Part shown: positions 7,943-61,847 of the stretch, in pieces
Numbering within the stretch: position 1 is the first letter of the stretch
Layout of the letters: every line of letters begins with the position of its first letter
Made by a program: the position numbers and the translations under genes
The notes under the pieces: model-generated
Database searches by the model: none
What the model was told of the DNA's origin: nothing
The model's input: only the letters and a program-made list of their open reading frames with translations
Assembly (NCBI GenBank): GCA_002269645.1
Contig: NIVC01001422.1
Coordinates: 155,987-219,986, forward strand
Direction: 5' to 3'
From: Macrostomum lignano
Taxonomy: Eukaryota
DNA length: 64,000 bases

Positions 7943-8447
7943 TAGGCAAACATGTAGGTACACAGCTCACTTGTGCTCGGCGGTCTCCTGCGTGAGCGTC
8001 TCCACCCGCTCCTTGAGCTCGACAGTCTCAGTCTCGGCCTCGCGCCTCCGATTATCGGCCTCCTCAAGGCCGCTGGCGGCCAGCGGGATCTCGTCCCGGC
8101 AGAGCCGCTCCCGGGCGCTGACGGCAGCCAGGGTGGCCTCGGCCGATCGCAGCAGCCGCAGCCGCAGCCCGGCCTGGCCGCCGCCGCCGTCGGCCGGAAC
8201 CGGCGGGCAGCCACCGGCTCGCTGGAACACGCTGGGGCCGGGCGAGAGTCGCCGCTCTCCTGGGCGGCCGATTCGGCGGTGTAGCCAGCGTCGGCTTCGG
8301 CTGCGGTGACGGCCCGGTCAGTTAGGCGGCGGTAGCGCAAGGAGCTGGCGCCCTCCGTGCCGGAGGCCTGCAGTGTTGAGGAATTCCATGTTCGGGGCTG
8401 TGATAACAAGAGGACTACTACTACTACTACTACTACTTCTACTACTG

Positions 8448-8488
<41 letters not shown>

Positions 8489-8546
8489 GCTACTACTACT
8501 ACTACTACCACTACTACTACTACTACTACTGCTACTACTACTACTA

Positions 8547-8589
<43 letters not shown>

Positions 8590-11500
8590 CACTACTACTA
8601 CTACTACCACTACTACTACCACTACTACTATATCTACTACTTGTACTACCCAGCTCACCATATCAACCCAGCGCCGGATCTGGGAGCGGCTGTGCAGCAG
8701 CCCCAAAGACAGCACCAGCTCTTCGATGTCGCGCGAGGCCAGCTGGCCGGTTCGATCCCGGTCGAAGAACTCGCAGGCCTGCAGCAGGGCCGGACGAATC
8801 GTCCGGGTGAGCCCGGTTGCGGCTTCGTCGGCGCCCGCATCGGCGGCAGCGGAGGAGTCCAGACGCGGTCGCTTCCGCTGCGTCTCGCTGCCATCGTCGG
8901 CGGAGGTTGCGGCGCCCGTTCTGGATGTACCGATAATCCAAAATCTCAAATCGATAATCCCAGATTACAAACTGAATCTCACATCTCAAACCGATAACTC
9001 CACATCCCAAACCTATAATCCCTCATCTCAAACTGATAATCCCACATCCCTAACCGATAATCCCTCATCTCAAACTGATAATCCCACATCCCTAACCGAT
9101 AATCCCAAATCCAAAACCGATAATCCCACATCCCTAACCGATAATTTCAAATCTCCAACCGATAATCCCACATCCCTAACCGATAAACCCAAAATCCGAA
9201 ACCGATAATCTTACATTCCAAACCGATAATCCCACATTCCAAACCGATAATCCAGCATTCCAAACCGATAATTTCACATCTCAAACCGATAATCCCACAT
9301 CTCTAACCGATAATCAAACATCTCTAACCGATAATCCCACATTCCAAACCGATTATCCCGCATCCCTAACCGATAATTTAAAATCTCAAAGCGAGAATCC
9401 CACATTCCAAACCGATAATCCAAAATCTCAAACTGATAACTCCCCATTCTAAACCGATAATCTCACATTCGAAACCGATGATCCCAGTTTGAAAATATGT
9501 ACAAACCGATTAACCTATTAATATTTTAAAGAGCTATATAGCACTTCCTAAATCCCACAGTCAACTCTACTCAAATCTACACCCAGCATGCAGAACGCAC
9601 GTTCCAGCCTCGCCCTCGTTCTGCTCGCAGTCGGCCAAGGCGGTGCAGATGTTGTAGGCGCAGTCGCGGACCAGCATCTCGTGAAACTGCTCGCAGAACA
9701 GAGCCACCTCGAAAGCGGACTCGCGGCCGCCGGAATCCAGTCGGTTGGAGAGCAGCTGGCTGAGGCTGGCCGACTCCAGGCGAAGCCGGCCGCCCTTGGC
9801 TGTCCGGCTGGGCCAGGCGGGCAGGGCGGGCGTGTCGGGCAGCCGGTGATGGCGCCGGATTCGATCCTGCTCGCGATCCGACAGCGGCGACACGCGGGGC
9901 TTCTCTCTGGGTAGTGTAAGATAACGAAGCCGATTGATCAAAAGTTCCTTGCAAAAATATCCAGCAAAAAACCAATTAAAGCATTCTTATCCATGCAGCC
10001 TCAGCCAGCTTCTATAGTGTATCAAAAAGGAGAAAAGCGCCAGAAAATGTGGCAACTGTTGCTGTGCTCAGGGAGCTGAACAAGAAGCACCAGCGACTAA
10101 GGGCGCGCTCAAAGTCACTGACAGAAATTGTGAAAGTGCTGTAGGCAAAGAATATTGTGGATGAAGCTGCAGCATCCCATCTGCAGTTTCTGTCATCAAA
10201 TTCATTGTTGAGCTGTCTAGTGCCAACTAAAAACAAGAGGATAAAAAATTTCCTCCTGAAGTTCGGCGATTTGCTTCCACGTTGCACTATTACAGTCCTA
10301 AGGCATACAAATACGTGAGAAAGTTTTTCCAGCTTCCATGCATCCATCTTCTTTACGGAAATGGAGCTCAAGTGTGTACGATGCCTTCCAGGATTCTGCG
10401 TCCAAGCATTCCAAGAACTATACGTATTCTGCTGAACACCGAAACGATTATTCGCCGCTCCAGCTTTGATAGCTGCTTTTCAAGCCCAATCGCTGTTCAA
10501 GAGACTTTGAATTTGAATTTCACTTTGAATTTCAACCGCTATTCTGTGAATTGGATTCGCATTCAGCAGCTGTAGCACAGGTATTGAGTCAAGAAAGTTA
10601 TGAGCATTTTTTACATCAGAATTCGCATGAAGAAAATTGCGAAAGACATGTCGCACTTATTAAGAAAGGCAGGAAGGAGACAGAAGCTGCTGCGCACAGC
10701 AATTTTTCTTAATCTGAAAGCTGGGACTTCGAAGGACATTTCGGGGTAATTTAATTTAATTTCATTACTTTTATGTATTTGGTTTTCGTGGCGTTTTATG
10801 TAAAAAAGAAGGAAAAAATGTATCTCAATTGCATGTGTCCAATAGGAGCACAATGGAAAAGAGGCCCGCTCTGTACCACATATCGATCGAGCTGGGGTGG
10901 GTGAGAGGGACCAGTTTCTTATGGGGGAAAATGGCCCACTTTTTTCTTCACTTTACTGGTCTATATTCTATATGGTCTGTGGCCGCGCCCTAGAAACCGA
11001 AGATCCTTACCCGGATTCTTTAGCGTCGTCGTTTTCGGATGTTTCAGCAGCGGCATCTCCAGGCTTCTCTGGGTCGGCCTCCTTTGCCTCGGCCTCCTCC
11101 CGTAGGACTTCCTCCAGCCTAGCAACTAGCTGGGCCTTGAGTCCGCGAGAATCTCGACCTCGCGACTCCAGTTCGCGCCTCAGATCGGCAACTTTCATAG
11201 CCTGCAGATTGGACAGCTGGCTAGCGCTGCCAGCAGCTGACGTGTCGGCTTCGGAATCTTCAGCTGTTGCAGCTGTCGCCGAGGCATCTGCGGATTCGGA
11301 CTGTGGGGGGAGGTAACGTGTAGTACGGTGAAACACTATTATGTGTACTATCGACATTCGAGTGCTACACCACCTGGTACACTGGTAGCTACACCACCTG
11401 GTACACTGGTAGCTAAACCATCTGGTACACTGGTAGCTACACCACCTGGTACACTGGTAGCTACACCACATTGTACACTGGTAGCTAAACCACCTGGTAC

Positions 11501-12368
11501 ACTGGTAGCTACACCGTCTGGTACACTGGTAGCTACACCACCTGGTACACTGGTAGCTACACCACCTGGTACACTGGTAGCTAAACCACCTGGTACACTG
11601 GTAGCTACACCACCTGGTACACCGGTTAGCTACACCACATTGTACACTGGTAGCTAAACCACCTGGTACACTGTTAGCTACACCACCTGGTACACTGGTA
11701 GCTAAACCATCTGGTACACTGGTAGCTAAACCATCTGGTACACTGGTAGCTACACCACCTGGTACACTGGTAGCTACACCACATTGTACACTGGTAGCTA
11801 AACCACCTGGTACACTGGTAGCTACACCGTCTGGTACACTGGTAGCTACACCACCTGGTACACTGGTAGCTACACCACCTGGTACACTGGTAGCTACACC
11901 ACCTGGTACACTGGTAGCTACACCACCTGGTACTGGTAGCTACACCTCCTGGAAGAAATAGACTCACCTTCCCGTCATCGCCAGCGTTTTCAGTTTCGGC
12001 CGGCGCACTGCTGGCGTCAGCATCGTCAGCAGCAGGCTGCCCTTGCTCATCCTCTTTCGGCGGCGGGGGCGGCGGCGGCGGCGGTGGATAGATAAGAGCG
12101 TCAACTCGCTGGCCTATGATTTCGGTAAGCCGGCCCCATTGTTCGGCATCGGGAACGGCAGTCCAGACGTCGGGCAGAAAGTAAGTTACAGTTTCTAGTC
12201 GAGCCTGCTGCTGGCTCGAATCGCTGCTGCTGCTGCGACGCGGCTCTCGGTAATAGTGCAGCTCCATGAACTTGTACCTGGAATGTTGGGCAGCGGGGAA
12301 ACGTATATGGCATGTGATAATGAATAGATGGACTTAAGGAGGCAGTGGAAGAGAGGGGTTAGACAGTC

Positions 12369-12437
<69 letters not shown>

Positions 12438-14966
12438 GGCAGACAGACACAGACAGGCAGACACAGACAGACAGACAGAAACAAACAGACATGGTCTCAC
12501 CAGGTGCTGCAGCCCGACAGATCGACCCCAGCCAGGCGCCGGGCATGCCGGATAGCCGTGTTAACCAGCACCATGGGATCGCCCTCGACATCCTCGCCAT
12601 CAACAGACGGGCTCCACGGGCCACCGAGGGCCAGAGGATCGGGTGGGGCCGACTTGCTATCGCCGCTGCTAACGAAGCCGCAGAGGAAGCTCAAAGCGTT
12701 AGCCAGGCCGATGCAACGGAAACGAGAGTCGGCGGCGGCCTGGGCCAGCGAGCAGGTCTGACGGTAGAGCTCGGCCAGGCTGGGACAGCTCAGCAGCATC
12801 ACCTTGGCTGAGTAGCGATAGTCCTGGCGGAGGGGAGCAAAGGAGTTAGCTAACAGAGAAGGTGCCAGGTACTAAAGGGACGGCAGTTACAGAGAGGGCG
12901 CCAGATACAGAGGGGCGCCAGCTACAGAGGACGCCAGCTACAGAAGGGCGCCAGCTACAGAGAGGGCGCCAGCTACAGAGAGGGCGCCAGCTACAGAGAG
13001 GGCGCCAGCTACAGAGGGCGCCAGCTACAGAGAGGGCGCCAGCCACATACGGGGCGGGCGCCAGCTACAGAAGGGGCGCAGGTACAGAGAGGGCGCCAGC
13101 TACAGAGGGGCGCAGGTACAGAGAGGGCGCCAGCTACAGAGGGGCGCAGGTACAGAGAGGGCGCCAGCTACAGAGGGGCGCCAGCTACAGAGAGGGCGCC
13201 AGCTACAGAGAGGGCGCCAGCTACATACGGGGAGGGCGCCAGCTACAACAAGAGCGCAAGCTACATACGGGGCGGGTCTGGTGGGACGCCAGCTACATAC
13301 GGGGAGGGCGCCAGCTACATGGGGCGGGACACCAGCTACAACAGGAGCGCCAGAAAAAGATACGCAAACAATTGAGGTCGAGTCTAGAGTAACCGACTCA
13401 TAGAATCCCCACTTTTTTCGATGATCCCCATTTGAGAGACCCTCGATGGAGGATGGACAATGAAGGCTTTACTCTATGGGCCACAGAGAAGCAGCGTAAT
13501 ATTTAGCGTAAATAAATCGCAAATGCCTCACCTGATCCTGAGGCTCCAGAACCGGCGCGTCTGAGTTCCCAGTTAGAACGGACCATTCGTCCAGAGTTAG
13601 GGGATCTACTTCGCGCGGAAACACGTGATAATTAACCGTCCGGCAGCCCAGACGGATGGGACTGCCAATGGGGAAGGCAGCAGACCAGCCGTTGGTGACG
13701 TGGAACAGGTCCGAAGGCGGATGCAGACGGGGATATCGCTGGCGCAGTTCCATAACTGACAGTTCCGGCAGGCCCAGAACCCGATGAGGCACAGATGCCG
13801 CGTGAGCAACCGACGGAGCCGATGAGCGATGAGAGGAGTCGCCGCGATCTCGCCGTCCGCTGGCCTACAAAAATTGATCAGCGCAATTGTCTCAGGCGAC
13901 TTAAAGCTTTTATAGAGAATCACAGAGGGTAGTGACTAGTGAGTATCGTCAGGTCCAACCCTAGCATCAGAGGGTATTTATAATCTTCAGGTCTAACCCT
14001 AGCATCATAGAGGGTATTTATAATCTTCAGGTCTAACCCTAGCATCATAGAGGGTATTTATAATCTTCAGGTCTAACCCTAGCATCATAGAGGGTATTTA
14101 TAATCTTCAGGTCCAACCCTAGCATCATAGAGGGTATTTATAATCTTCAGGTCCAACCCTAGCATCATAGAGGGTATTTATAATCTTCAGGTCCAACCCT
14201 AGCATCATAGAGGGTATTTATAATCTTCAGGTCCAACCCTAGCATCATAGAGGGTATTTATAATCTTCAGGTCTAACCCTAGCATCATAGAGGGTATTTA
14301 TAATCTTCAGGTCCAACCCTAGCATCATAGAGGGTATTTATAATCTTCAGGTCCAACCCTAGCATCAGGGAGGGTATTTATAATCTTCATGTCCAATCCA
14401 AATCTAGCATTCGGGAGGCTGGGAGGGTATTTTATAAACTTCAGACAAAAATCCTAGCATCAGGGAGTGAATTTATAATCTTCAGGTCCAACCCACCCTA
14501 GCATCAGAGAGGGTATTTAGAATCATCAAGATCCAACTGTAGCATTCGGGAGGTCGGAGGGTATTTATAATCTTCAGACAAAAACCCTAGCATCAGGGGG
14601 GGGGGTATTAAGAATCCTCAGGCTTCAAAGATGTTAAGAATCAAGGATGCCAACAGTTTAAACTGAAGCTCTATAAAATTAAAAAACACAACGCGGAGAT
14701 CTGCTTACAAACAAAGGTGTTTAACAAACCTGACTGCCGCTGCTTCGATGCCTCGACTCGATTCGCACAGACCTAGCCGTCCATTTGGCCGCCTTGCCGG
14801 GCGTGTGGTCGGCCACCACAGACACATGGTCGCCAACACGGGGCTGGCCGCCAGTCACAAGGTTGCGCACGAAAAATATGTCATCATTCACGTAGCCAAA
14901 CTTTTCAAATAGCTTCGTGATGGTGCCGTGGGTTGTCTTTTGACTCTGGGGCCGCGATCCGAGCAT
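6945..14966 (-). CDS. CCAR1: CCAR1/DBC1-family protein (cell division cycle and apoptosis regulator); exons complement(14730-14966, 13532-13864, 12501-12823, 11968-12277, 11011-11300, 9601-9906, 8659-8920, 7971-8367, 6945-7248)
   Basis: Domain order matches CCAR1: S1-like (GTITKLFEKFGYVNDDIFF), ELRQRYPRLHPPSDLF, YSAKVMLL + GGPWSPSVDGED...TAIRH (DBC1/Nudix), SAP (MKVADLRRELESRGRDSRGLKAQLVARL), FEVALFCEQFHEML, EF-hand (FFDRDRTGQL), YRRLTD, coiled coil. Intron phases are consistent except for one frameshift in 7971-8367. Further 5' exons are possible. Confidence 0.85.
7340..7476 (-). mobile_element. Internally deleted copy of the SINE at 2015-2283, in the last CCAR1 intron
   Basis: Shares CCGACAGCTCAGCCGCAGCT.TTGCGCGGCGCATCTGAAGGCTGCG and CTCAAGGACACAAATT...GAATCGAACCC.CGACCTTT with the first copy. 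Confidence 0.75.
7845..7949. repeat. (GACA)n microsatellite, intronic
   Basis: Seen directly in sequence. Confidence 0.9.
8414..8640. repeat. (CTA)n microsatellite filling a CCAR1 intron
   Basis: Seen directly; it produces the spurious poly-V/T/L ORFs. Confidence 0.95.
8930..9485. repeat. ~21-bp minisatellite (AAACCGATAATCCCACATCYC), intronic
   Basis: Tandem copies seen directly. Confidence 0.9.
9990..10730 (+). mobile_element. Internally deleted P-element/THAP9-like transposase relic in a CCAR1 intron
   Basis: Translation FPPEVRRFASTLHYYSPKAYKYVRKFFQLP (about 10250-10340) resembles the P/THAP9 motif F.LTLHFYSPKAY.YVR. The later FYIRIRMKKIAK...RQKLLRTAIFLNL resembles the family C-terminus. 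Stops and frameshifts are present. Confidence 0.65.
11011..11300 (-). CDS. CCAR1: CCAR1 exon encoding the SAP domain
   Basis: LQAMKVADLRRELESRGRDSRGLKAQLVARLEE; acceptor CCCACAG, donor GTAAGG. Confidence 0.85.
11366..11950. repeat. 21-bp minisatellite (CACCTGGTACACTGGTAGCTA), intronic
   Basis: Tandem copies seen directly. Confidence 0.95.
12361..12490. repeat. (GACA)n microsatellite, intronic
   Basis: Seen directly. Confidence 0.9.
12885..13350. repeat. ~19-21-bp minisatellite (GCGCCAGCTACAGAGAGG), intronic
   Basis: Tandem copies seen directly. Confidence 0.9.
13970..14620. repeat. ~41-bp minisatellite (TCAGGTCYAACCCTAGCATCATAGAGGGTATTTATAATCT), intronic
   Basis: Contiguous tandem units with no unique spacers; it degenerates toward 14620. 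Confidence 0.9.
14730..14966 (-). CDS. CCAR1: CCAR1 exon encoding the S1-like (OB-fold) domain
   Basis: MLGSRPQSQKTTHGTITKLFEKFGYVNDDIFFVRNLVTGGQPRVGDHVSVVA...KWTARSVR; AG immediately before ATG, donor GTTTGT. Confidence 0.8.
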
Positions 14967-16041
14967 CTTTGGACAGCATGAATAGGGGAATGCGATTAAA
15001 TATATTTCAGTTTGAGTCAGTTCATATAAAAAATGAACAAACTTTCTATACAAACTAATATTATTATGATTACTTAAAAATGCTAATAATATCGTCTAAG
15101 CTAAGACAGCAAACTTGATGTTGATTGTTGTGAATTGTGAAATATCTTCACGAGGGGAGCCAGATACAGAGTCAGAGGCAATACTATAGAGACAATCATA
15201 ATATATATGGAATCTTGCCCACTAGATCTTTCAAACTAAAAACACATTAACAATGTACTGGTGCCATTTAAATTAGAGTTATTTTGTAAATTAAATTCTT
15301 TTGCTATTTATTTAAATCCTTCTTTCATAAATAAAATATTATACAATATACTATTAGAAAAACTAGCAGAAAAGAATATAAATAAATAGGCCTAGAATTC
15401 TTAAAAAACACAAGATTATTGAAATCTTTTAAAACTTTGCAATAGGCCTAGGGTGGCCCATGGGCCACATGCAGCTTACAAAGCCTTTCTATATAGCCTT
15501 CAGTTCTTTTGAGGCTTAAAATTAATAATCTAGCCTATTCAATGTTTCTATCTTTTCTCTTCTTTCTTTCCTTTTTTCTTTTTGTCTTATTTCTTCAGCT
15601 TTATTCCTTACTTTACATTTCTCCTATTTTTTCTTTATTCCCTTTCCTTTCGATTTCTCTATTCTACAATCATATATTAAGTTCTCTATTTAGCCTTTAA
15701 GATAAAAATTTGCTAATCCTTAGCTTAGGGCTAAGGGTTCAAATAAGATTTTAAAAGTTTTTTATACTATTTTGTATATTACTATATATAAGTCCTATTT
15801 GCCTAAGTTTTTATAGTTTTTATATATAATAGATAAAAATAAATCTACTATAGCTAAAACAACTAAAACCTTTATAATATTGCCTAAAATGTAGGTGCTA
15901 AAAAAATTGTCAAATGGCTAGAGTCTGACTAAGATAGGAAAAATCTGGTTGGGCGAGATTGGGTGAGATTGGATTCATAAAATTCAAGACTTGGGATTGG
16001 TTGAGATTGGGATCAAGGTCTACCATTTGCATTTAGACTTA

Positions 16042-18093
16042 CGAAGGTTATGTCATAAATTTGCTGACAAACTTACATAGTATCTGTTTCTTTTGTACTT
16101 TGGGACAGAATTTTTGTTACAGACTAAGGCTTCATTGATCTTATTGTCTATGGAGTATCTTCCCTCTGGCTTTTGAGATAAGGCAGAAATTGAGTGGCAT
16201 TCAAACCACCCTTCTAGCCAGTATGGAGAAAAGTGAAGCTGCCAAGTGCACTGTCATTTGGTCATTGTGGAAGCAGCAGAAGAAGCAGGCTAATATTTAC
16301 CGCGAGCGGCTGCAAATCTTTGGTGAAGATGCACCTTCGAAACAAACTGTGTCAAAGTGGGTGCAGCCCTTTGAGGATGGCTGGGAGACAGTTTATGATG
16401 CTCCCTGCACAGGTTCACTACAGTCATCCACTTTCAGTGACAATATCTAGCGTGTGCAGCATGCCCTGAACAATGATTATGGAGCAACCCTGAGGTAGTT
16501 AAAGGACTTGTTGGCAATACCAATGAAGAACATTCATCACATCATCTCTGACCATCTGCATATGACACGAGTTGTTGCACAATGGGTCCCTAAACTGCTG
16601 ACTCCTGTCCAACTGCAAGAAAGGGTCTAGATATGCCGCCACCTGCTCAATGCTAGTGATAGATCAAAATTTGATTTTGATTTCGATATTCCAAATTTTG
16701 AAACTAATTTTGCATTGCAATAACTTTGATTTTGATTTCAAATTTCGACACCATTCATCAAAAATCATTTCAAAATTTTGGTTATATTTTAACAATTTAG
16801 ACATTGATGATCATGCTACACGATTAAGAAAATCTATAGGAAGTGAAAGGAAGCGCAGTTCAAAGACTCAGTGGGGAGGTGAGAATCGCCTTTTCTATAA
16901 GAAAAGATTGTGCAGGGCACACACTGTTCCAGGCCTTGTGCTGCACCCACCTCAACCTCCACAAGCCCACTGGCTGAACTCATTGGCGTGGATTTTAATT
17001 GGCTAAAGACTTAAAGCCTTAATGAAATGGATATAGGCTACTCATATCTAGATCTTCAGCTTAAACAGTGGTGAAGTATAATACAACTTCTACTGTATTT
17101 TTATGTACAAGTTTATAATACATAATACACTAGCATTTTCTATTTTCTATTTTTAAAGTAAGTTAAATCTAAAGTATTCTGGTTTAAACATATTAAAGAT
17201 ACTTTTTATAAAACATATAAGCTCTACAGAGGCAAGGTGTTAACCTTTTTGCATGATTAGCGAAAAAGTAAAAATTTGTTAAGCTCTAAAAATTTCAATT
17301 TTGATTTCAATTTTGATTCTAAGGAACCGAAAATTTCGTTTTTGATTTTGATTTGAAAAATAATTTTGATCCATCATTACTCAATGCCTATCAAAACAAG
17401 CCCAACTTTCTTGGCCGCCTGGTGACTAATAATGAAATGTGGTTTCACTTCTATGAACTGGAAACGAAACAGCAGAGCAGCGTCTAGAAGGCTACTCACG
17501 AACTCCCACTGGTCAAGGCCAATGTGGTGCAGTCAGCAGGTAAGCACATGGCCACCGTGTTCTGGGACAGAGAAGGCATCTTGTTAATCGAGTGGCTACC
17601 TGAAGGCAGAACCATCAATGCCCAGTACTACTGTGAAATATTGGAACGGCTGCATGAGAAGATCAAGAGTGAGTGCCGAGAAAGGATCACCAGGGGCACT
17701 GTGCTGCAGTAGGACAACGCTAGGCTGTATACTTGCAATGCAACTATGGATGTCATCAGGAGACTAGGCTTCGAGTTGCTGCCTTACCCTGCCTATTCTC
17801 CTAAACTGGCCCCTAGTGACTATTGGCTGTTCCTTAAAATGAAAGAGCCTCTTTGTGGCCATCGCTATGGAAGCCTTTTTGCACCCAGCTTGGCTATCAG
17901 CCAGTAGGTATGTGGGACCCCCACAGAATTCTTCACCCAGGGCATCAGCAAGCTCCCAGAGAGATGGCACAAATGTGTGCAGCTTGGGGATGACTATGTT
18001 GAGAAGTGCAATGTTGACAATTAGCTGTTCTTTATTTTGTTTCTTGTTTGTTTGCAGTTTGTAGTTTTTAGTGAATTTATGACACAACCCTTG
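16042..18093 (+). mobile_element. Mariner (D34D) DNA transposon, inactivated; transposase pseudogene 16223-18024
   Basis: Degenerate TIRs (TA|CGAAGGTTATGTCATAAAT ... ATTTATGACACAACCCTTG|TA) with TA TSD. Translation shows the WVPKLL, ATVFWDREG, DNAR and YSPKLAPSDYWLF motifs, with 34 residues between the second and third Asp. Confidence 0.9.
16654..17379. mobile_element. hAT-type MITE nested in the mariner transposase
   Basis: 8-bp TSD CTCAATGC (16646-16653 and 17380-17387); TIRs TAGTGATAGATCAAAATT / AATTTTGATCCATCATTA. Removing the element restores the transposase frame. Confidence 0.85.
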
Positions 18094-18334
18094 TATTTAG
18101 ATATAGGATGGCTAAGGATTATTTATAATAGTTGGCATGTATATCAATTAGTATTAGTAGTCATGATATTACTCCCACTATATTCTATTAGTCTAACTTT
18201 TAGTTTAGTATAAGTTAATACTATTGAGTGTAAAGCCTAGACAAACTCAGGTTTTGGTTAAGTTTAGTACTTGACTAAACTTTGAGATTTGAGCTCAGTA
18301 TTCAAGTTGAGTTTTGTTGAGTAGTCAAATAGAA

Positions 18335-19839
18335 ATGTGAGGGTTTCCCGACAGATATTCAGACAGATATTCAAAACAATCATCTACTACTTTTAACAAA
18401 ATGGACCAAATGGAACCATATTTTTGGCAGATGTTTACGCATGTGTTTGCAATCAAATGAGCCCAAATTTGTTTTATAAAATAAAAAACTTTACGAAGTG
18501 CATTGTTTCAAAGATTGCTTGGCAACACCCTGATTCAGCATCTCTTCAACGTTTTCTGAAAATGATTCAATTTTTACATCCCATAAATGTGCCCCGTATC
18601 CCAAAAAGACAATGGACTAACTCTTACGCATGTTTCAGCTGTAAAATGCCGCATCACGCGTCTAATAAAATACTTTACTTCCTGAATTATTTTCTTTTAA
18701 AGTGTGCTTGGCGATTTGCTTTTTTGAAGGCAAGCCAAGAAACAGCGCATATTTGCTGATGTCAGAACTCGATTTCGCTCTCAAATTAAATGAATTTATA
18801 GTTCCATTCTTACACACATCCCAGCTTTAGAATGACACCATTGAAGCTGAAAAAGAAACAGTATTTCCTGAGATATTTGACTCTAAAGTGTGCTTTGCTT
18901 TTGAGTCAATAACGCTTGACGTTGTATATCAAAATATACGCCAAGAAATTGTGACACCATTTTTTGCTTACGAAACATAAAACTAACTTGCTCTTTTAGG
19001 CACGTCCCAGCTTTAAAATGACACCTCAGGCGTCGCCAAAGACGCCACCGTTCGTGAGATATTCGACTCGAAACATTGCTCGGCGTGTATAGACATTTAC
19101 CTTGAGAAGTCAATTGCAGTCAATCTTGGCGAAACTTTAATGAAGATATTTGATTTGAAACATTGCTTGCCATTTAGTTTGACAGGTGTGTAAACACAGG
19201 TGGAGCACGTGCACAAAGATTGGGAATACATTTGATTTATAAGGTGAATGTCTGTACACGCCGAGCAATGTTTCGAGTCAAATATCTCACGAACGGTGGT
19301 GTCTTTGGCAACGCCTGAGGTGTCATTTTAAAGCTGGGACATGCGTAAAAAAGTGAGTTAAGTTTTATGTTTCGTAAGCAAAAAATGGTGTCACAATTTC
19401 TTGGCATATATTTTGATATACAACGTCAAGCATTATTGACTCAAAAGCACAAAAGCAAATTGCCAAGCACACTTTAAAAGAAAATAATTCAGGAAGTAAA
19501 GTATTTTATTAGACGCGTGATGCGGCATTTTACAGCTGAAACATGCGTAAGAGTTAGTCCATTGTCTTTTTGGGATACGGGGCACATTTATGGGATGTAA
19601 AAATTGAATCATTTTCAGAAAACATTGAAGAGATGCTGAATCAGGGTGTTGCCAAGCAATCTTTGAAACAATGCACTTCGTAAAGTTTTTTATTTTATAA
19701 AACAAATTTGGGCTTATTTGATTGCAAACACATGCGTAAACATCTGCCAAAAATATGGTTCCATTTGGTCCATTTTGTTAAAAGTAGTAGATGATTGTTT
19801 TGAATATCTGTCTGAATATCTGTCGCAAAACCCTCACAT
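18335..19839. mobile_element. Foldback-like non-autonomous DNA transposon (almost wholly palindromic)
   Basis: Termini ATGTGAGG...CCTCACAT with 8-bp TSD AAATAGAA (18327-18334 and 19840-19847). Outer arms about 18335-18720/19455-19839; inner arms about 18885-19110/19250-19455. Confidence 0.85.
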
Positions 19840-21391
19840 AAATAGAATGAAAATTTAATAGTTAGAAAATTTCAAACCTCAACCTTGCTCTATTTGACTA
19901 TTGATATATTTTTTGTATTAAACTTTTTTTGTTAGTTTAATACTTCCAATAATTAAGCCTATAAATTCTCAAATGCCACCTTTAGTACAAAATCTTGCTT
20001 TTCAATTAATTTTTGTTTGAGTAAGTTAATTCATTTATTCAAGTGACCATTTTCTAGGAAATTAGAATAACCAAACCTCAAACTAAATAAACATTTAAAA
20101 AATCAATTTGGTATATTTGCCTTATTTAGTCTTTTCATACTCACTTCTAAATGGTGTTTATAGTATACTTAAAATGTAAAAACTTTTTATTAATCCTGCC
20201 CAACTTTTCCTAACTCCTGACATTTACTCTTGACATGGTCAAGAATCTGAAAAAAATACCCAGGTCCCAACCAAGTTAGGATCGCAATGAGAATCTTGGT
20301 CAGGCTCTAAAACTGGCCTAGTTGCATAGTAAATTTGTCAATAGGTAAATTTGTCAACTGGTAAATTTCTCAATACAGTACAATAATGTCACTATGTGAA
20401 GCTATTTCAGTGCATAGATAAAATAGATTCATAAAACCAGTGAGCAGAACTATGTCATTTTAATGGTTTTTAGACATTGGCCTAGGCCTATGACATAACA
20501 ATTGTGACAATTATGACAATGCTTTTACTGCTGCCAGATTTTTGCTGGAATGTCCTATTGCTAAGATTTATTGGATACGAGACAATAGGCCTACATATGT
20601 AACCCAATAGTTTCCTAGATGTACAAATGATTAAATATGAGATAGGCCTACAATTATAAAAATAATGAAACTGGGAATCTTCCATGGCAAAAACTAGGGA
20701 TAGTAATCTTGGGATATCTGCAATCTCTTAATCAATTTCAAATTTGATTAGTTTCAATCAATGTAAATCAATCAAAATCAACTCATTTATGCATATATAA
20801 ATTAAAACTTTATTGGTTTTGCTTTTGTTTGTATCACTTACTTCTGGCCTATACACTTCATTATATTGCATATTAGTTATATGCTAAGTATCATTATCAC
20901 TATCAATATCTCATCTCAATTCTTTCTAAAAAATCTCTTTACTTTCTGTCTCATGTTTTATTTGTTCGAGGAAGTTAAGTCGGCTGGCCGCTGTTAATTG
21001 GATCGGCGGCAGTTTATCTGCAATTTTAAACGAGAGACTTTTTAAAGTAAAAAATAATACGATAATCAACTAAACAAAAATTAATAAGTAGTCAACGTTA
21101 GTTTTTGTTTAAAAAAATAGTTAGTTTAAGTCTTAGTGTTGTGGATTTTAAACAATTATATTACCGTTTAATTTAAAGTTTTTAGCTGGAAAAACCGAAT
21201 AGTAAACTGCCCAGGGAACTGGGGTAAATACCGGGTATCAAAAACGGGTGCCTCAGGAATAAGAATAATCTAGAGCTAGATTCATGGTGTCAAGTCTCGA
21301 AGTATCAGTATCTCAACTCCATCTAAACGTCTCAGCATTTCAGTATTTGTAAATTTATATTAAGCTAGGATATTAAGTAATGGTCATGCAG

Positions 21392-21993
21392 TGTAACGTA
21401 GGACGTAAAAATCAAAGATCGAGTATTTTTGGGGGCTAATTTCCTGGATTTCACTGCATGCATGCAGGTACGATCTTAACCGTAAGTTGGGTCTTGGCCT
21501 AAAAAATGATAGTTTCCTAATGACTATAGGTCAACAACAATTTAATATGGGAAATGATATTAGTAAATAAACATTGTCTGCATTTTATTATTTAGACGCA
21601 TTTTAGACAGTATAGCTACGCCTTGATGAAACAATATCTACATTAATGGTTTTACGATTACCTGCATGCAACATTTTATTACAATAATACTTGATTCAAG
21701 AAGGAAAAAAACTAAAAGTTCAGCTAATACCACTTGTGAGTAGTTCCAAACTCTGGGATTACGAAATAAAATAAAACAATGTAAAAATGAAACTTCAACT
21801 CAACAACCATATAAAATATATAGAGTAACATGTTAAGCATGCTTAATTAAAAGAATGGTAATCTACTCTGCCCCAGATGAAATGCAATCATAGATTTTGA
21901 GATGAAAAAAATTTCTCATCTTCTCCAGTGTTATTTTTTTAGGAAATTGGCCTCCTAAAATCTACACGATCTTTGAGTTTACGTCCTGTTACA
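21392..21993. mobile_element. Non-autonomous element with ~55-bp imperfect TIRs
   Basis: TGTAACGTAGGACGTAAAAATCAAAGATCG...CTAATTTCCT versus AGGAAATTGG...CGATCTTTGAGTTTACGTCCTGTTACA; no convincing TSD. Confidence 0.6.
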
Positions 21994-22335
21994 ATACAGT
22001 GGTCCTTGAGTTAAATTAGTATGAGAAATATAAAAATTAATAATTACTAGTTACTAATACATAGCTCGTAATTAGTAATGCAATACATGTAACTTTAAAC
22101 TTATTAATAAAGAAGTATTTTTTTTTTTTATGTACGCATTTGTTTTGTATCATACCAAAATCTATCATCTCGGCTCTGTGGTATTGAATTTATTAACAGC
22201 AATTTTAAGTAGCATGCGCATATACTGTACACGTACATGTAACTGGTAAGGTGCTAATTCATCTAACGATGTTTAATCAATATTAACAAGCTATTGCAAA
22301 ATTTAAGACAATGAGGGGACGTTATCGAAGTATAG

Positions 22336-22725
22336 TCAGAGCAGGGTACATTTATTGAGGCTATACTTCATATGAACGATCTGGTTGCTTCTCTTGTACT
22401 CGTCAATGACAAAAGTCAGCTCTCGGACCAGAACTTGCAGGTTCAGGTTGTCCCTGTACCCGTCAGGCAGTTCGATGGCAGAAAATATTAGCGTGCCGTT
22501 CATCTCGATTTCGAAAGCGTACCACAGGTCCATCTTGGATTCCATGTTAATGTAGAAGTCGCTCAGCAGCATGTGCTCACGGAGCATGCGATATATTTCA
22601 AAGTTTTTCTCATTCCTGATGCAGAATGACACAACAAGCTCGATCCGTTGTTGAGACACGTTTTTTTCTATTTTGAACGTGCTGTGGGTGAAGGAGCAGT
22701 AGTTATATAGATTTTTTGGACGCAT
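22336..22725 (-). CDS. Intronless 129-aa orphan ORF, function unknown
   Basis: ATG to TGA with coding-like codon bias (TTC, ATC, AAC, TAC, GAG, CTG) inside AT-rich DNA; AATAAA overlaps the last codons. Confidence 0.5.
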   Translation of the reverse strand: MRPKNLYNYCSFTHSTFKIEKNVSQQRIELVVSFCIRNEKNFEIYRMLREHMLLSDFYINMESKMDLWYAFEIEMNGTLIFSAIELPDGYRDNLNLQVLVRELTFVIDEYKRSNQIVHMKYSLNKCTLL

Positions 22726-24911
22726 GTAGGTGGATTTTCACAATTTCTGTTAGCCGTTCTATTTAGAAGATCAACCCAACTGACTCCCGAGAATGTGCTT
22801 TTAAGAATTAAATAAGCCTTATGCATGTAAGCTCAAAGTTATCAACTCTCTCACCGGCTTCTGATGCGAGACAGCACGTCCAACGTACCAAAAGAAAACC
22901 GCCGAGTGGATTATTCATGACTGCAGATGCTAAAAGTATTTCAGTATTGCGTCTTGAGTGTTTCTGGTTTTCATGTTCGAAAACCTTACTGGGACTACTG
23001 TGTTACAGTGTGCTTTGCAATATTTCAGGCAAAATTCTATGGCTCAACTTCCCTTTTCCTGTGTACACGTAGAGAATTTTTATACAAAATACGAGCATAA
23101 AATGTTCAATAGTAAGTTTGTAAAAAATGACCTTTTAATGTCGCTTGTTATAAGTAATAAATACGTTCGCAGGCAGCATACCACCCAATAATGCGTTTTC
23201 AGTTTTCACTGCTCTTCAAGCAATACTCCTACACTTTACTGTATATATACATAGACGGCACTTTACCTTAGTAAAGTCGACCCCCTCAAATAAAAACGAC
23301 TTGTTATAATTACGAGTATTTCAAACGAAGAAATAAAGAAGACTGCCTGATTGTCCCTTTGACATTCTCTGCGTCTGGCTTACAACGATCGTAGCAAAAT
23401 AGTTGGTTTAACAAGTTTTCCTCTTGCTTAACAAGTAGAAAGCTGCGCTGCCAGCATATTCGACGTGACTGTGTGCTCGAAATGCTTTGAGTGAGTAAAC
23501 CAAGCGAGAGTGACAAAGAGAGAACGGGCGAATGTAAGCAAATGACGGGCTTAGCAAACAATTCACTGTTCAACTGCCATGAGCTGCGCCACTCTAGGCG
23601 CATTCGTACATGTGGGCGCTTGCGCTCGGCTAAAGCTGACTTCTATAGTGCATCCTAACTTCCATCTAGCCCACTCTCCTCATATTATTTCCACCTGGAC
23701 TCGAGACAGCCAAGCCAAGGCCTGCTGCTGCCAGTCTCAACTCCCGGGGCAACTAGGCGAATCCTGCCAAAGTAGAAAAAAAAATTGGCGTCAAGGAGCT
23801 AAACCCGCAGCGCGGCTAGAATAGTCGATGGCTGCCGAGGCGACGGATGCGGCTTTGAGTCATCAAAGGCGCCGAGCATCAGCGCTGGTGCAGCCGCCAC
23901 AAGCGGCAGGTCGCGGCAGAGTTGACATCAAAAGTCGCGACGGCGTGAGGAATTCACTTCGTGGTGAGGCGACGAAGCGTAACCAAGTTTGCCCGTAGCA
24001 ACTAAAATAGGTATAATTTTGCATCGAGCAGTTATATTACTCAGACCGGAGACTCTAGAAAAATTGCAGGCAGTTATTCAGTCAATTTGTTGTTTTCACT
24101 GGGGTTTTCAACTTCTGTTGAATTGATTCACTTCGCCAATCACTCTGAGAGCATGCTTTCAGACCAGAACTTCCTATTTCCCATTTTTACGATCCAATCG
24201 CATTTACGCCGTAAAAAGATAGGCTACAGTGGACGCCCATGAAACTGTATATGGAAAATATTTTTACTGCAACTTTATGACATTTGCATTGGGTGTTGCA
24301 TTGTTTAGAATAATTAGCCGTATGACAACTGAGGCATGAGGTGGATCCCCTGCCTACGCATGCCTAGTGCAGCTCAGGTCACGCTGAGGATGAAAAATCC
24401 TCGCGTACACCTGCCGTTTCCTGGTTCTCAACAGCCTTTGCAGTCCCGTCCAATAAGACATGGTGGTTGCCGGCAAGGGGACAATAACGTGCATTCTTTT
24501 TGGAAGCAATCGAAACAAAAATCCAGCTCTCCCGTTTCCTATTTGATTGTTTTTTTACAATCCCCCCCTCTAGCTGAGGATGATGCCTTGCTCAGCATCC
24601 CCGCTGCTCTTCAGTCAATGAAAAACGCCTTGGTTTAGCGCATCTTCCTTCCTCATCAATCCTAACCAATCCCATCATCCCGCACGCTCGGCTCAGCGCA
24701 CCTCAGCTTACTCGCTTTGATAGCAAAGGAAAGGCAAAGCGAAAGAACCATTGAAATGAAGTTATAGACGCTCTGGGATGCTATTGCTTCTGCAGTTCAT
24801 TTATTGAGTTATCCGCCATCCCGGAAGTCCCACCGGTTGAGCGGGAAGTGCAGCCTGGCTGGATGAGCGGCTAACAACGTCGGTCATCGAATTCGGGCAG
24901 CCTTTGCAAGG

Positions 24912-61847
<36,936 letters not shown>

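What the first reader, a model, noticed from the sequence alone, without database searches (positions are those of the whole stretch)
16042..18093. RIP-like (CpA/TpG->TpA plus CpG) hypermutation of a transposon in an animal genome
After removing the nested MITE, the mariner transposase has no frameshift but six premature stops, all TAG (16448, 16496, 16628, 17485, 17710, 17905). Most sit where mariner proteins have Gln (CAG->TAG) or Trp (TGG->TAG). Other apparent changes fit the same spectrum: VTGDETW->VTNNEMW (GGT GAT->AAT AAT), ARPHT->ARLYT (CCG->CTG, CAT->TAT), HP->YP. CpG-only deamination would mainly give CGA->TGA stops. CpA->TpA on both strands is the hallmark of fungal repeat-induced point mutation. 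Host exons nearby keep abundant CpG and CpA, so the process appears repeat-targeted. This could be an undescribed TE-defence system (heavy CpA methylation or RIP-like deamination). The ancestral codons are inferred from family knowledge.
Basis: partly seen in the sequence, partly recalled or inferred. Interest (0 to 1): 0.8.

Follow-up and report, generated by a model that had tools for sequence, protein, structure and literature searches.

The report
C-to-T-riddled dead mariner in flatworm
A dead mariner transposon in the flatworm Macrostomum lignano has been mutated almost only by C-to-T changes, mostly at CpG sites, which fits decay of methylated cytosines better than a fungal-style RIP defence, although an unexplained excess at other cytosines remains.

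Summary
Window 16042-18093 is a mariner with TA target-site duplications, split by a 726-bp MITE. Without the MITE it reads as one 355-codon frame with six premature TAG stops.

The window is Macrostomum lignano, contig NIVC01001422.1. An intact relative, identical on three contigs, gives the ancestral codons: CAG x4 and TGG x2.

Against that relative, 80 of 99 substitutions are C>T or G>A, and only 4 are T>C or A>G. Rates by context:
- CpG 35.5%
- CpA 9.7% (CAG alone 17%)
- CpC 5.5%
- CpT 5.4%

So CpG dominates, not CpA, and the RIP indices stay negative. Duplicated non-transposon DNA 2-15 kb away shows no C>T bias. Codon usage explains most of the all-TAG pattern (P about 0.03).

M. lignano keeps DNMT1 and DNMT3, so deamination of methylated cytosine is the economical explanation. 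The hypermutation is still real. Scaled to the other substitution types, C>T is about 13-fold in excess at CpG and 5.5-fold at non-CpG sites, with only 2 indels where about 18 would be expected. The non-CpG excess is unexplained, and the evidence comes from one locus plus one younger copy.

The parts
16040..16041 (.). TA target-site duplication, left side of the mariner
   Evidence: Sequence read directly. The intact copies L001 and L002 are also flanked by TA.
16042..16061 (+). Left terminal inverted repeat, CGAAGGTTATGTCATAAATT. The consensus reads CGAGGGTTGTGTCATAAATT.
   Evidence: 30-bp self-complementary ends in BLAST.
16042..16653 (+). Mariner, 5' part: 5' UTR and codons 1-143 and part of 144. 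The ORF starts at 16223.
   Evidence: Translation. Pfam HTH_48. 92.3% identity to consensus positions 1-614.
16448..16450 (+). Premature stop 1, TAG. The ancestral codon is CAG (Gln).
16496..16498 (+). Premature stop 2, TAG. The ancestral codon is CAG (Gln).
16628..16630 (+). Premature stop 3, TAG. The ancestral codon is CAG (Gln).
16646..16653 (.). 8-bp target-site duplication CTCAATGC, left copy, of the nested element. The consensus mariner reads CTCAACGC here, so this CpG>TpG change happened before the nested insertion.
16654..17379 (.). Nested non-autonomous element (MITE), 726 bp, GC 0.31. Its terminal inverted repeats are TAGTGATAGATCAAAA and TAATGATGGATCAAAA. The 8-bp duplication points to the hAT superfamily (inference).
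   Evidence: No other copy in the window, L005 or L008.
17380..17387 (.). 8-bp target-site duplication CTCAATGC, right copy.
17388..18093 (+). Mariner, 3' part: the rest of the transposase (natural stop TAG at 18022-18024), 3' UTR and right terminal repeat.
   Evidence: Transposase_1 domain. 91.5% identity to consensus positions 607-1314.
17485..17487 (+). Premature stop 4, TAG. The ancestral codon is TGG (Trp); the G>A change is at 17486.
17710..17712 (+). Premature stop 5, TAG. The ancestral codon is CAG (Gln of the QQDNARPH motif).
17905..17907 (+). Premature stop 6, TAG. The ancestral codon is TGG (Trp); the G>A change is at 17906.
18074..18093 (-). Right terminal inverted repeat. Its reverse complement reads CAAGGGTTGTGTCATAAATT.
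18094..18095 (.). TA target-site duplication, right side of the mariner.
24609..33893 (.). Non-transposon control DNA: the 5' region and first exons of the nesprin-like gene. It has paralogous copies on contig NIVC01001808.1 (L008), one direct and one inverted. It was used to measure the local background substitution spectrum.

Best explanation
This is a dead copy of a Macrostomum lignano mariner (Tc1/mariner superfamily). It inserted at a TA about 13 kb upstream of a nesprin-like gene, and an 8-bp-duplicating MITE later inserted into it.

After insertion the copy decayed without selection. The decay is overwhelmingly cytosine-to-thymine on both strands.

The most likely cause is spontaneous deamination of 5-methylcytosine in an element that the germline keeps methylated through DNMT1 and DNMT3. 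Methylation would be dense at CpG, where a third of sites are already converted. De novo methyltransferase spill-over at non-CpG sites, preferring CAG, would account for the smaller excess there.

The six TAG stops are by-products of C>T acting on a frame rich in CAG and TGG and poor in CAA and CGA.

**Shown:** the anatomy, the ancestral states, the substitution spectrum, its contrast with nearby non-transposon DNA, and the host identity.

**Inferred:** that methylation is the cause, that it is aimed at the element rather than at its whole AT-rich compartment, and that the non-CpG component is also due to methylation.
For: **Spectrum**
- 80 of 99 substitutions are C>T or G>A (44 and 36).
- Rates are CpG 39/110 = 35.5%, CpA 22/226, CpC 9/164 and CpT 10/185. 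T>C is 4/626.
- CpG against non-CpG gives an odds ratio of 7.2, P=1e-13.
- All four NCG contexts run at 33-38%, as expected for general CpG methylation.

**Non-CpG detail**
- CAG is 13/76, but its complement CTG is only 4/76.
- From my own knowledge, that asymmetry resembles animal DNMT3 non-CpG methylation and not symmetric plant CHG methylation.

**Polarity is sound**
- Three contigs with different flanks carry an identical intact element.
- More distant relatives agree with the intact copy at 42 of 51 amino-acid differences, and with the window at 3.

**Decay is neutral:** substitutions fall 27/26/25 over the three codon positions.

**A second genomic copy shows the same proportions.** L005, 98.2% identical to the consensus, has CpG 7/110, CpA 4/226, CpC 2/164, CpT 2/185 and T>C 2/627.

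**Background contrast**
- Polarised differences among three paralogous non-transposon copies give C>T 48/6957 and T>C 38/7980.
- The mariner differs from this at P=8e-10.
- Scaled to T>C plus transversions, 2.9 CpG and 7.4 non-CpG C>T changes are expected. 39 and 41 are observed.
- The host indel-to-substitution ratio of 0.186 predicts about 18 indels for 99 background substitutions. Only 2 are seen, P=2e-6.

**Composition:** CpG observed/expected falls from 0.62 in the consensus to 0.27 in this copy, while host exons stay at 1.03.

**Host**
- The window is M. lignano.
- The species retains DNMT1 and DNMT3 and has low-level 5mC (PMC11292947, PMC9246332, PMC10658182).
Against: - CpC and CpT sites, which animal DNMTs methylate poorly, also show about a 4% excess over background. 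A flat, context-independent component is not what methylation alone predicts.
- No methylation data exist for this locus. Reported 5mC in adult worms is low.
- The control DNA is GC-richer (0.45) and partly coding. GC-biased gene conversion or selection there could hide a genome-wide AT-biased mutation pressure.
- The AT-rich flanks of the element are also CpG-poor (observed/expected 0.48-0.68, with single kilobases at 0.2). The process may therefore be regional rather than aimed at transposons.
- Only two genomic copies of one family could be examined.
Confidence: 0.55

Rival explanations
1. Ordinary neutral decay under a genome-wide, strongly AT-biased mutation pressure plus CpG methylation of the AT-rich intergenic compartment. 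Nothing is aimed at the transposon. A GC-rich element (52% GC) dropped into a compartment of about 30% GC simply relaxes toward local composition. The nearby control DNA looks different because GC-biased gene conversion and selection filter its substitutions.
For: - The flanks are AT-rich and CpG-poor: GC 0.28-0.34, CpG observed/expected 0.2-0.7.
- The same holds around the second copy in L005.
- Unpolarised paralog differences show that CpG transitions are also over-represented in non-transposon DNA, 27 of 91 transitions.
- The lower confidence bound on the non-CpG ratio of GC>AT to AT>GC changes is about 4, by my own calculation from the counts. From memory, that lies inside the range seen in some animals.
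Against: - The measured bias is 8.5-13 fold per site. That implies an equilibrium GC of 7-10%, far below the 28-34% of the flanks (my calculation counts, with flank GC).
- Only 2 indels are seen against about 18 expected from the host's own indel-to-substitution ratio. Conversion or selection would have to remove about 80% of GC>AT changes in the control.
- T>C changes and transversions in the mariner fit a young age of about 1.5%, while C>T stands at 11.7%.
Confidence: 0.25
2. Enzymatic cytosine deamination aimed at the transposon. This would be an animal analogue of RIP (a DNMT-like or RID-like enzyme) or an AID/APOBEC-like deaminase, acting in one or a few episodes on all cytosines with some preference for CpG and CAG.
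For: - The changes are C>T only, lie on both strands, and show an excess in every dinucleotide context.
- About 70 excess transitions sit beside a 'young' count of other changes and indels, which suits a burst.
- There is weak strand coordination of non-CpG events: 16 runs against 21 expected, P=0.075.
- Pyrimidine-C contexts are slightly favoured, 9.1% against 5.3%, P=0.10.
- Some basidiomycete RIP-like processes do target CpG-containing triplets (PMC3318451, abstract only seen).
Against: - CpG is the top context with no 5' neighbour preference. That is the signature of 5mC decay, not of a known deaminase.
- RIP indices are negative.
- 3.8-kb duplicates at 98.6% identity, including an inverted pair, show no C>T bias: 17 C>T against 13 T>C on the sister lineages. 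Duplication alone therefore does not trigger the process.
- There is no spatial clustering (dispersion index 1.19, P=0.6).
- At least one CpG change predates the MITE insertion and is shared by both duplication copies, which is compatible with gradual accumulation.
- No such enzyme is reported for flatworms in the literature searched.
Confidence: 0.12
3. The pattern comes from comparing with the wrong ancestor. The intact copies come from Namib salt-pan metagenomes, so the differences might reflect evolution of that active lineage toward GC rather than decay of the window copy.
For: - The reference copies are not from the M. lignano assembly.
- Six differences are shared by both M. lignano copies and may mark a subfamily.
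Against: - Relatives at 51-56% identity side with the intact copy at 42 of 51 amino-acid differences.
- The window states include six stops and loss of conserved motif residues.
- Differences are spread evenly over codon positions and the UTRs.
- The M. lignano copy L005 is 98.2% identical to the reference.
- Removing the six shared sites leaves 75 C>T changes out of 93.
Confidence: 0.03

Closest known systems
Methylation-driven CpG decay of transposable elements, as in vertebrate and plant genomes (5mC deamination to T)
   Same: - C>T and G>A on both strands.
- CpG is by far the most mutable context, at 35.5%.
- TpG and CpA are the products, so the (CpA+TpG) index does not fall.
- CpG observed/expected drops from 0.62 to 0.27, while unmethylated-looking exons keep about 1.0.
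- The host has DNMT1 and DNMT3.
   Different: - Non-CpG cytosines are also about 5.5-fold in excess, with CAG at 17% and CpC and CpT at about 5.4%.
- The host is a flatworm with reportedly low 5mC, and no methylation pattern has been published for any free-living flatworm (PMC9246332).
- Typical invertebrate methylation targets gene bodies, yet here the exons look untouched.
Fungal repeat-induced point mutation (RIP; Neurospora crassa type, RID-dependent)
   Same: - Exclusively C:G>T:A transitions on both strands of a repeated mobile element.
- Many nonsense codons arise from CAG and TGG.
- 11.7% of G:C pairs are hit, while other substitution types and indels stay low.
   Different: - The context order is CpG >> CpA > CpC and CpT, instead of CpA dominating.
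- The RIP indices are not met (0.76 and 1.57).
- Nearby duplicated non-transposon DNA is not affected.
- The host is an animal, and no RID homologue is known to me there.
AID/APOBEC editing of mobile elements in vertebrates
   Same: Excess C>T or G>A on a mobile element, including non-CpG sites, with a weak hint of strand-coordinated runs.
   Different: - Both strands are hit about equally.
- No TC, CC or WRC preference is significant.
- There is no clustering.
- The element is a cut-and-paste DNA transposon with no cDNA intermediate.
Animal non-CpG (mCAG/mCAC) methylation by DNMT3 enzymes
   Same: CAG is the only elevated non-CpG triplet, and its complementary CTG is not elevated. That asymmetry matches mammalian mCH (from my own knowledge).
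   Different: - In mammals this is known mainly from stem cells, oocytes and neurons, and is not known to leave a strong mutational footprint on transposons.
- The statistical support here is modest: P=0.001 raw, P=0.065 without the stop-making events.

Membership tests
mariner (Tc1/mariner superfamily) transposon | Transposase with an N-terminal Mos1-type HTH and a DDE/D catalytic domain | tested here: met
   Pfam HTH_48 (2e-5) and Transposase_1 (1.7e-17). 86% identity to an intact 355-aa transposase.
mariner (Tc1/mariner superfamily) transposon | Short terminal inverted repeats and a TA target-site duplication, with total length about 1.3 kb | tested here: met
   About 20-bp repeats, TA on both sides, and 1318 bp once the nested MITE is removed.
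mariner (Tc1/mariner superfamily) transposon | Coding capacity intact (an autonomous copy) | tested here: not met
   Six TAG stops, 51 amino-acid replacements including GDE>NNE and SPD>SPK in conserved motifs, and a nested insertion. This is a dead copy.
Fungal-type RIP | Almost exclusively C:G>T:A transitions on both strands | tested here: met
   80 of 99 substitutions: 44 C>T and 36 G>A.
Fungal-type RIP | CpA is the preferred dinucleotide (CpA>TpA, TpG>TpA) | tested here: not met
   CpG 35.5% > CpA 9.7% > CpC 5.5% and CpT 5.4%. CpA against CpC plus CpT gives P=0.067.
Fungal-type RIP | RIP indices: TpA/ApT at or above 0.89 and (CpA+TpG)/(ApC+GpT) at or below 1.03 | tested here: not met
   0.76 and 1.57 in the window copy. 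The consensus gives 0.54 and 1.55.
Fungal-type RIP | Triggered by sequence duplication as such, so any long duplicate is mutated | tested here: not met
   Non-transposon paralogs 3.8-6 kb long at 97-98.6% identity, including an inverted pair, show C>T roughly equal to T>C: 17 against 13 on the sister lineages and 48 against 38 overall.
Fungal-type RIP | RID/Masc1-type cytosine methyltransferase homologue in the genome, with action in a premeiotic stage | not testable with these tools
   No proteome search of M. lignano was possible.
5-methylcytosine deamination decay of a methylated transposon | CpG is the most mutable context, whatever its 5' neighbour, giving TpG and CpA | tested here: met
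   ACG 9/25, CCG 8/21, GCG 10/30, TCG 12/34. Odds ratio against non-CpG is 7.2, P=1e-13.
5-methylcytosine deamination decay of a methylated transposon | The host has maintenance and de novo DNA methyltransferases and detectable 5mC | not tested
   Literature only: DNMT1 and DNMT3 are conserved and 5mC is low in M. lignano (PMC11292947, PMC9246332, PMC10658182). The primary paper (Wasik 2015) is not held.
5-methylcytosine deamination decay of a methylated transposon | The element is methylated in the germline | not testable with these tools
   Needs bisulfite or nanopore data.
5-methylcytosine deamination decay of a methylated transposon | Non-CpG cytosines mutate at the background rate (classical CpG-only model) | tested here: not met
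   41 observed against 7.4 expected. An added non-CpG component is required.
AID/APOBEC-type editing | Strand-coordinated clusters of C>T or G>A | tested here: inconclusive
   Runs test gives 16 observed against 21 expected, P=0.075. No spatial clustering, P=0.6.
AID/APOBEC-type editing | Characteristic 5' neighbour preference (TC, CC or WRC) | tested here: inconclusive
   TC 9.2%, CC 9.1%, AC 6.6%, GC 4.4%. Pyrimidine-C against purine-C gives P=0.10.
hAT-superfamily MITE (nested element) | 8-bp target-site duplication and short terminal inverted repeats, with no coding capacity | tested here: met
   CTCAATGC appears twice, with 16-bp imperfect terminal repeats and a length of 726 bp. The superfamily assignment rests on duplication length only (inference).

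The most novel reading that the evidence does not exclude
Macrostomum lignano has a transposon-directed process that converts cytosines to thymines in every sequence context: CpG > CAG > the rest. It would work either through dense CpG plus non-CpG methylation of transposons, or through an enzymatic deaminase. It would act faster than ordinary mutation and spare genes and non-transposon duplicates. In function this would be an animal counterpart of RIP, though not a member of that family.
Probability: 0.15. Interest if true: 0.75.

Novelty: new member of a known kind. Interest (0 to 1): 0.35.

Why it matters
If the pattern holds genome-wide, Macrostomum lignano methylates and mutationally erodes transposons rather than gene bodies. 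That is unusual for an invertebrate, and reviews say the methylation pattern of free-living flatworms is unknown.

About three quarters of this genome is repeats (from memory, not checked here), and the species is a regeneration model. A mutational footprint of transposon silencing would give a cheap, sequence-only handle on that biology.

The non-CpG excess would deserve a specialist's attention if confirmed. On present evidence this is one decayed element behaving mostly as methylated DNA is known to behave.

Tried and rejected
**Ideas considered and rejected**
1. A fungal origin, which would make this ordinary RIP. I considered it because the AT-rich flanks look RIP-like by eye. The host gene is a nesprin-like CH plus spectrin protein, and the window matches the M. 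lignano assembly at 100%.
2. A variant genetic code in which TAG is a sense codon. The natural stop is also TAG. Two of the six sites are TGG in the intact relative, and the intact relative uses CAG or TGG at all six.

**Searches for more copies of the family, to build a real consensus**
- The metagenome scan returned only a relative at 47% identity.
- A degenerate Y/R pattern tolerant of C>T found nothing in genome contigs or viral contigs.
- Window self-BLAST found no second mariner copy, and the MITE has no other copy in the window, L005 or L008.
- L008 holds no mariner copy.

**Host identification**
- A search with a 484-aa spectrin exon found nothing.
- Exact-product look-ups of two window ORFs found nothing.
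- The 1096-aa ORF then succeeded.

**Control for the AT-rich compartment**
- The paralogous contig is nearly identical to the window over 20334-23334, with 2 differences in 3 kb. No spectrum could be measured there.
- The paralogous locus stops 2.2 kb short of the mariner. Whether the insertion is present there is unknown.

**Other**
- The inverted-repeat arms of the neighbouring element differ at only 6 sites, too few to use.
- The primary M. lignano genome paper, with its methylation data, is not in the library.
Full report
**What is there.** Window 16042-18093 is a mariner transposon.
- It is flanked by TA on both sides (16040-41 and 18094-95) and ends in about 20-bp inverted repeats.
- A 726-bp AT-rich non-autonomous element sits inside it at 16654-17379. 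That element has 16-bp imperfect terminal repeats and an 8-bp target-site duplication, CTCAATGC, at 16646-53 and 17380-87.
- Removing this element and one duplication copy leaves 1318 bp with a single 356-codon frame, 16223-16653 plus 17388-18024.
The natural stop is also TAG.
- Pfam finds the Mos1-type HTH and the mariner transposase domain.

**Host.**
- The long GC-rich ORFs at 36-60 kb are spectrin/nesprin repeats, and a CH domain lies at about 31 kb.
- A 1096-aa ORF matches PAA68132.1 of Macrostomum lignano at 100%.
- The fetched genomic locus L007 equals window 21293-52762 at 100%.
- The window is therefore the last 64 kb of contig NIVC01001422.1 in GCA_002269645.1, and the mariner lies at contig positions 172028-174079. 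It sits about 13 kb upstream of the annotated, partial gene.

**Ancestral sequence.**
- A protein search found an intact 355-aa transposase, P0001, at 86% identity.
- It is encoded on three short contigs from Namib salt-pan metagenomes. These contigs are identical across the whole element but have different flanks.
- A fourth contig differs at 2 sites.
- A genomic M. lignano copy, L005 9517-10831, is 98.2% identical to it.
- At the six stops the intact copy has CAG, CAG, CAG, TGG, CAG, TGG.
- Polarity is well supported. Six relatives at 51-56% identity agree with the intact copy at 42 of 51 amino-acid differences, and with the window at 3.
- Substitutions are spread 27/26/25 over codon positions and occur at similar density in the UTRs. 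The copy has therefore decayed without selection.

**Substitution spectrum.** Over 1311 aligned bases there are 99 substitutions. 44 are C>T, 36 are G>A, and only 4 are T>C or A>G; 15 are transversions.

| Ancestral context | C>T events / sites | Rate |
|---|---|---|
| CpG | 39/110 | 35.5% |
| CpA | 22/226 | 9.7% |
| CpC | 9/164 | 5.5% |
| CpT | 10/185 | 5.4% |

- CpG against non-CpG gives P=1e-13. CpA against CpC plus CpT gives P=0.067. Non-CpG C>T against T>C gives P=6e-10.
- All four NCG triplets run at 33-38%.
- The CpA excess lies entirely in CAG, at 13/76 or 17%. CAA, CAC and CAT are at 4-9%, and CTG is at 4/76.
- CAG against the other non-CpG sites gives P=0.001. The finding was selected for its TAG stops, and without those events the figure is 8/71, P=0.065.
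- Non-CpG events are not spatially clustered (P=0.6) and are only weakly strand-coordinated (16 runs against 21 expected, P=0.075).
- The younger L005 copy shows the same proportions: CpG 7/110, CpA 4/226, CpC 2/164, CpT 2/185, T>C 2/627.

**Why all the stops are TAG.**
- The ancestral frame has 17 CAG and 12 TGG, but only 5 CAA and 3 CGA.
- With the measured rates, 5.0 stops are expected, of which 2.8 are TAG, 1.7 TGA and 0.5 TAA.
- So P(all six TAG) is about 0.03, and P(no TGA or TAA) is 0.11.
- The pattern is a by-product of a C>T-dominated spectrum and codon usage. It is not a separate signal.

**Is it RIP-like?** In the narrow sense, no.
- CpG is the main target, not CpA.
- TpA/ApT rises only from 0.54 to 0.76.
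- (CpA+TpG)/(ApC+GpT) stays at 1.55-1.57, because CpG decay makes new TpG and CpA as fast as CpA>TpA removes them.
- Duplication as such does not trigger the process. A paralogous locus (L008, contig NIVC01001808.1) aligns to window 20334-33893 at 97-98% and carries a third, inverted copy.
- Polarised singletons among these three copies give non-CpG C>T 34/5796, CpG C>T 14/1161, T>C 38/7980 and 61 transversions.
- On the two safely polarised sister lineages, C>T is 17 against T>C 13.

**Is it hypermutation at all?** Yes, relative to that local background.
- The C>T to T>C contrast is 80:4 in the mariner against 48:38 in the control, P=8e-10. For non-CpG sites alone it is 41:4 against 34:38, P=1e-6.
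- Scaling by T>C plus transversions makes the mariner 2.2 times the control. On that scale 2.9 CpG and 7.4 non-CpG C>T changes are expected, and 39 and 41 are observed.
- Independently, the host paralog alignments have 29 indels per 156 substitutions. On that ratio, 99 background substitutions should come with about 18 indels, but the mariner has 2, both outside the ORF (P=2e-6).
- About 25 background substitutions would predict 4.6 indels, which fits.
- By its 'clock-like' changes the element is about 1.5% diverged, yet it carries about 70 extra C>T transitions.

**Mechanism.**
- Reviews state that M. lignano, unlike planarians and parasitic flatworms, keeps DNMT1 and DNMT3 and has low-level 5mC. 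They also state that the genomic pattern of methylation is unknown in free-living flatworms (PMC11292947, PMC9246332, PMC10658182).
- The CpG-dominated, neighbour-independent, two-strand pattern is what deamination of 5mC produces.
- The asymmetric CAG preference is what animal de novo methyltransferases do at non-CpG sites (my own knowledge).
- I therefore favour germline methylation of this element followed by spontaneous deamination (confidence 0.55).
- One step in the order of events can be read directly. The CpG>TpG change inside the MITE's target site is present in both duplication copies, so it predates the MITE insertion.
- What this explanation leaves open is the flat excess of about 4% at CpC and CpT.

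**Rival explanations.**
1. *A compartment-wide or genome-wide AT-biased mutation pressure*, hidden in the control by GC-biased conversion and selection (confidence 0.25).
   - In favour: the flanks are AT-rich and CpG-poor.
   - Against: the implied equilibrium GC of 7-10% is far below the flanks' 28-34%, and the indel test argues the same way (my calculation counts).
2. *An enzymatic deaminase or RIP analogue* (confidence 0.12).
   - It would explain the context-independent part and the burst-like excess.
   - It is not supported by context, clustering or the behaviour of duplicated non-transposon DNA.
3. *A wrong-ancestor artefact* (confidence 0.03). The polarity tests exclude it.

**Limits.**
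- Only two genomic copies of one family could be examined, and attempts to retrieve more failed.
- The control DNA is GC-richer and partly coding.
- The AT-rich stretch of the paralog alignment is nearly identical between copies, so it carries no information.
- The paralogous locus ends 2.2 kb short of the mariner site.

**Verdict.**
There is a real, C>T-specific, apparently element-enriched hypermutation in an animal. Its signature is that of methylated-cytosine decay with an unexplained non-CpG component, and it is not RIP.
- It is a new example of a known kind of process in a phylum where the relevant methylation biology is undescribed. Interest is moderate (0.35).
- The most novel reading still open is a transposon-directed, all-context cytosine-to-thymine process in a flatworm. 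I give it a probability of about 0.15.

Noticed in passing
window 16654-17379: A 726-bp AT-rich MITE is nested in the mariner, with an 8-bp target-site duplication (hAT-like). Its two terminal repeats differ from each other only by G/A transitions. No other copy exists in the roughly 107 kb of M. lignano DNA held.
   Followed up: partly
window 18335-19839: A 1.5-kb foldback-like element lies 240 bp downstream of the mariner. Its 392-bp terminal inverted arms are 98.5% identical, differing by 4 transitions and 2 transversions. Its CpG observed/expected is 0.92, so it is not CpG-depleted, unlike the mariner.
   Followed up: partly
L001, L002, L003, L006 (whole loci): Intact mariner copies that are identical or nearly so occur in four Namib Desert salt-pan metagenome or read-set contigs. 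They have different flanks and are 98% identical to the M. lignano genomic copy. This implies a Macrostomum-like animal in those mats, very recent horizontal transfer, or sample contamination.
   Followed up: no
window 20334-33893 vs L008: A paralogous locus on contig NIVC01001808.1 carries an inverted duplication of the gene's 5' region. Divergence from the window is mosaic: 2 differences in 3 kb over 20334-23334, against 2-3% elsewhere. The copy tree also differs between segments. Recent gene conversion or assembly of haplotypes or homeologs could explain this.
   Followed up: partly
window 36222-59658 (long ORFs) vs AT-rich non-coding kilobases: Exons of the nesprin-like gene are 62% GC with CpG observed/expected of 1.03. 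AT-rich non-coding kilobases fall to 0.2-0.7, and GC correlates with CpG observed/expected per kilobase (Spearman rho 0.49). This is the reverse of the usual invertebrate pattern of gene-body methylation.
   Followed up: partly
window 8414-8649, 8929-9486, 11364-11952, 12848-13353, 13945-14602, 26134-26718, 34726-35353, 50303-50771, 51334-51933, 54906-55141: There are about ten tandem-repeat arrays, with periods of 3, 18, 19, 21, 24, 38, 40 and 42 bp. They include an (ACT)n array at 8414-8649 and its reverse complement (GTA)n at 54906-55141, and a 19-bp array that is expanded in the paralogous contig.
   Followed up: no
window 11674-12267 (-): An ORF overlapping the 24-bp tandem array gives a weak DBC1-domain hit (E=1e-5, below the Pfam cutoff). 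This may be a second gene or a chance match.
   Followed up: no
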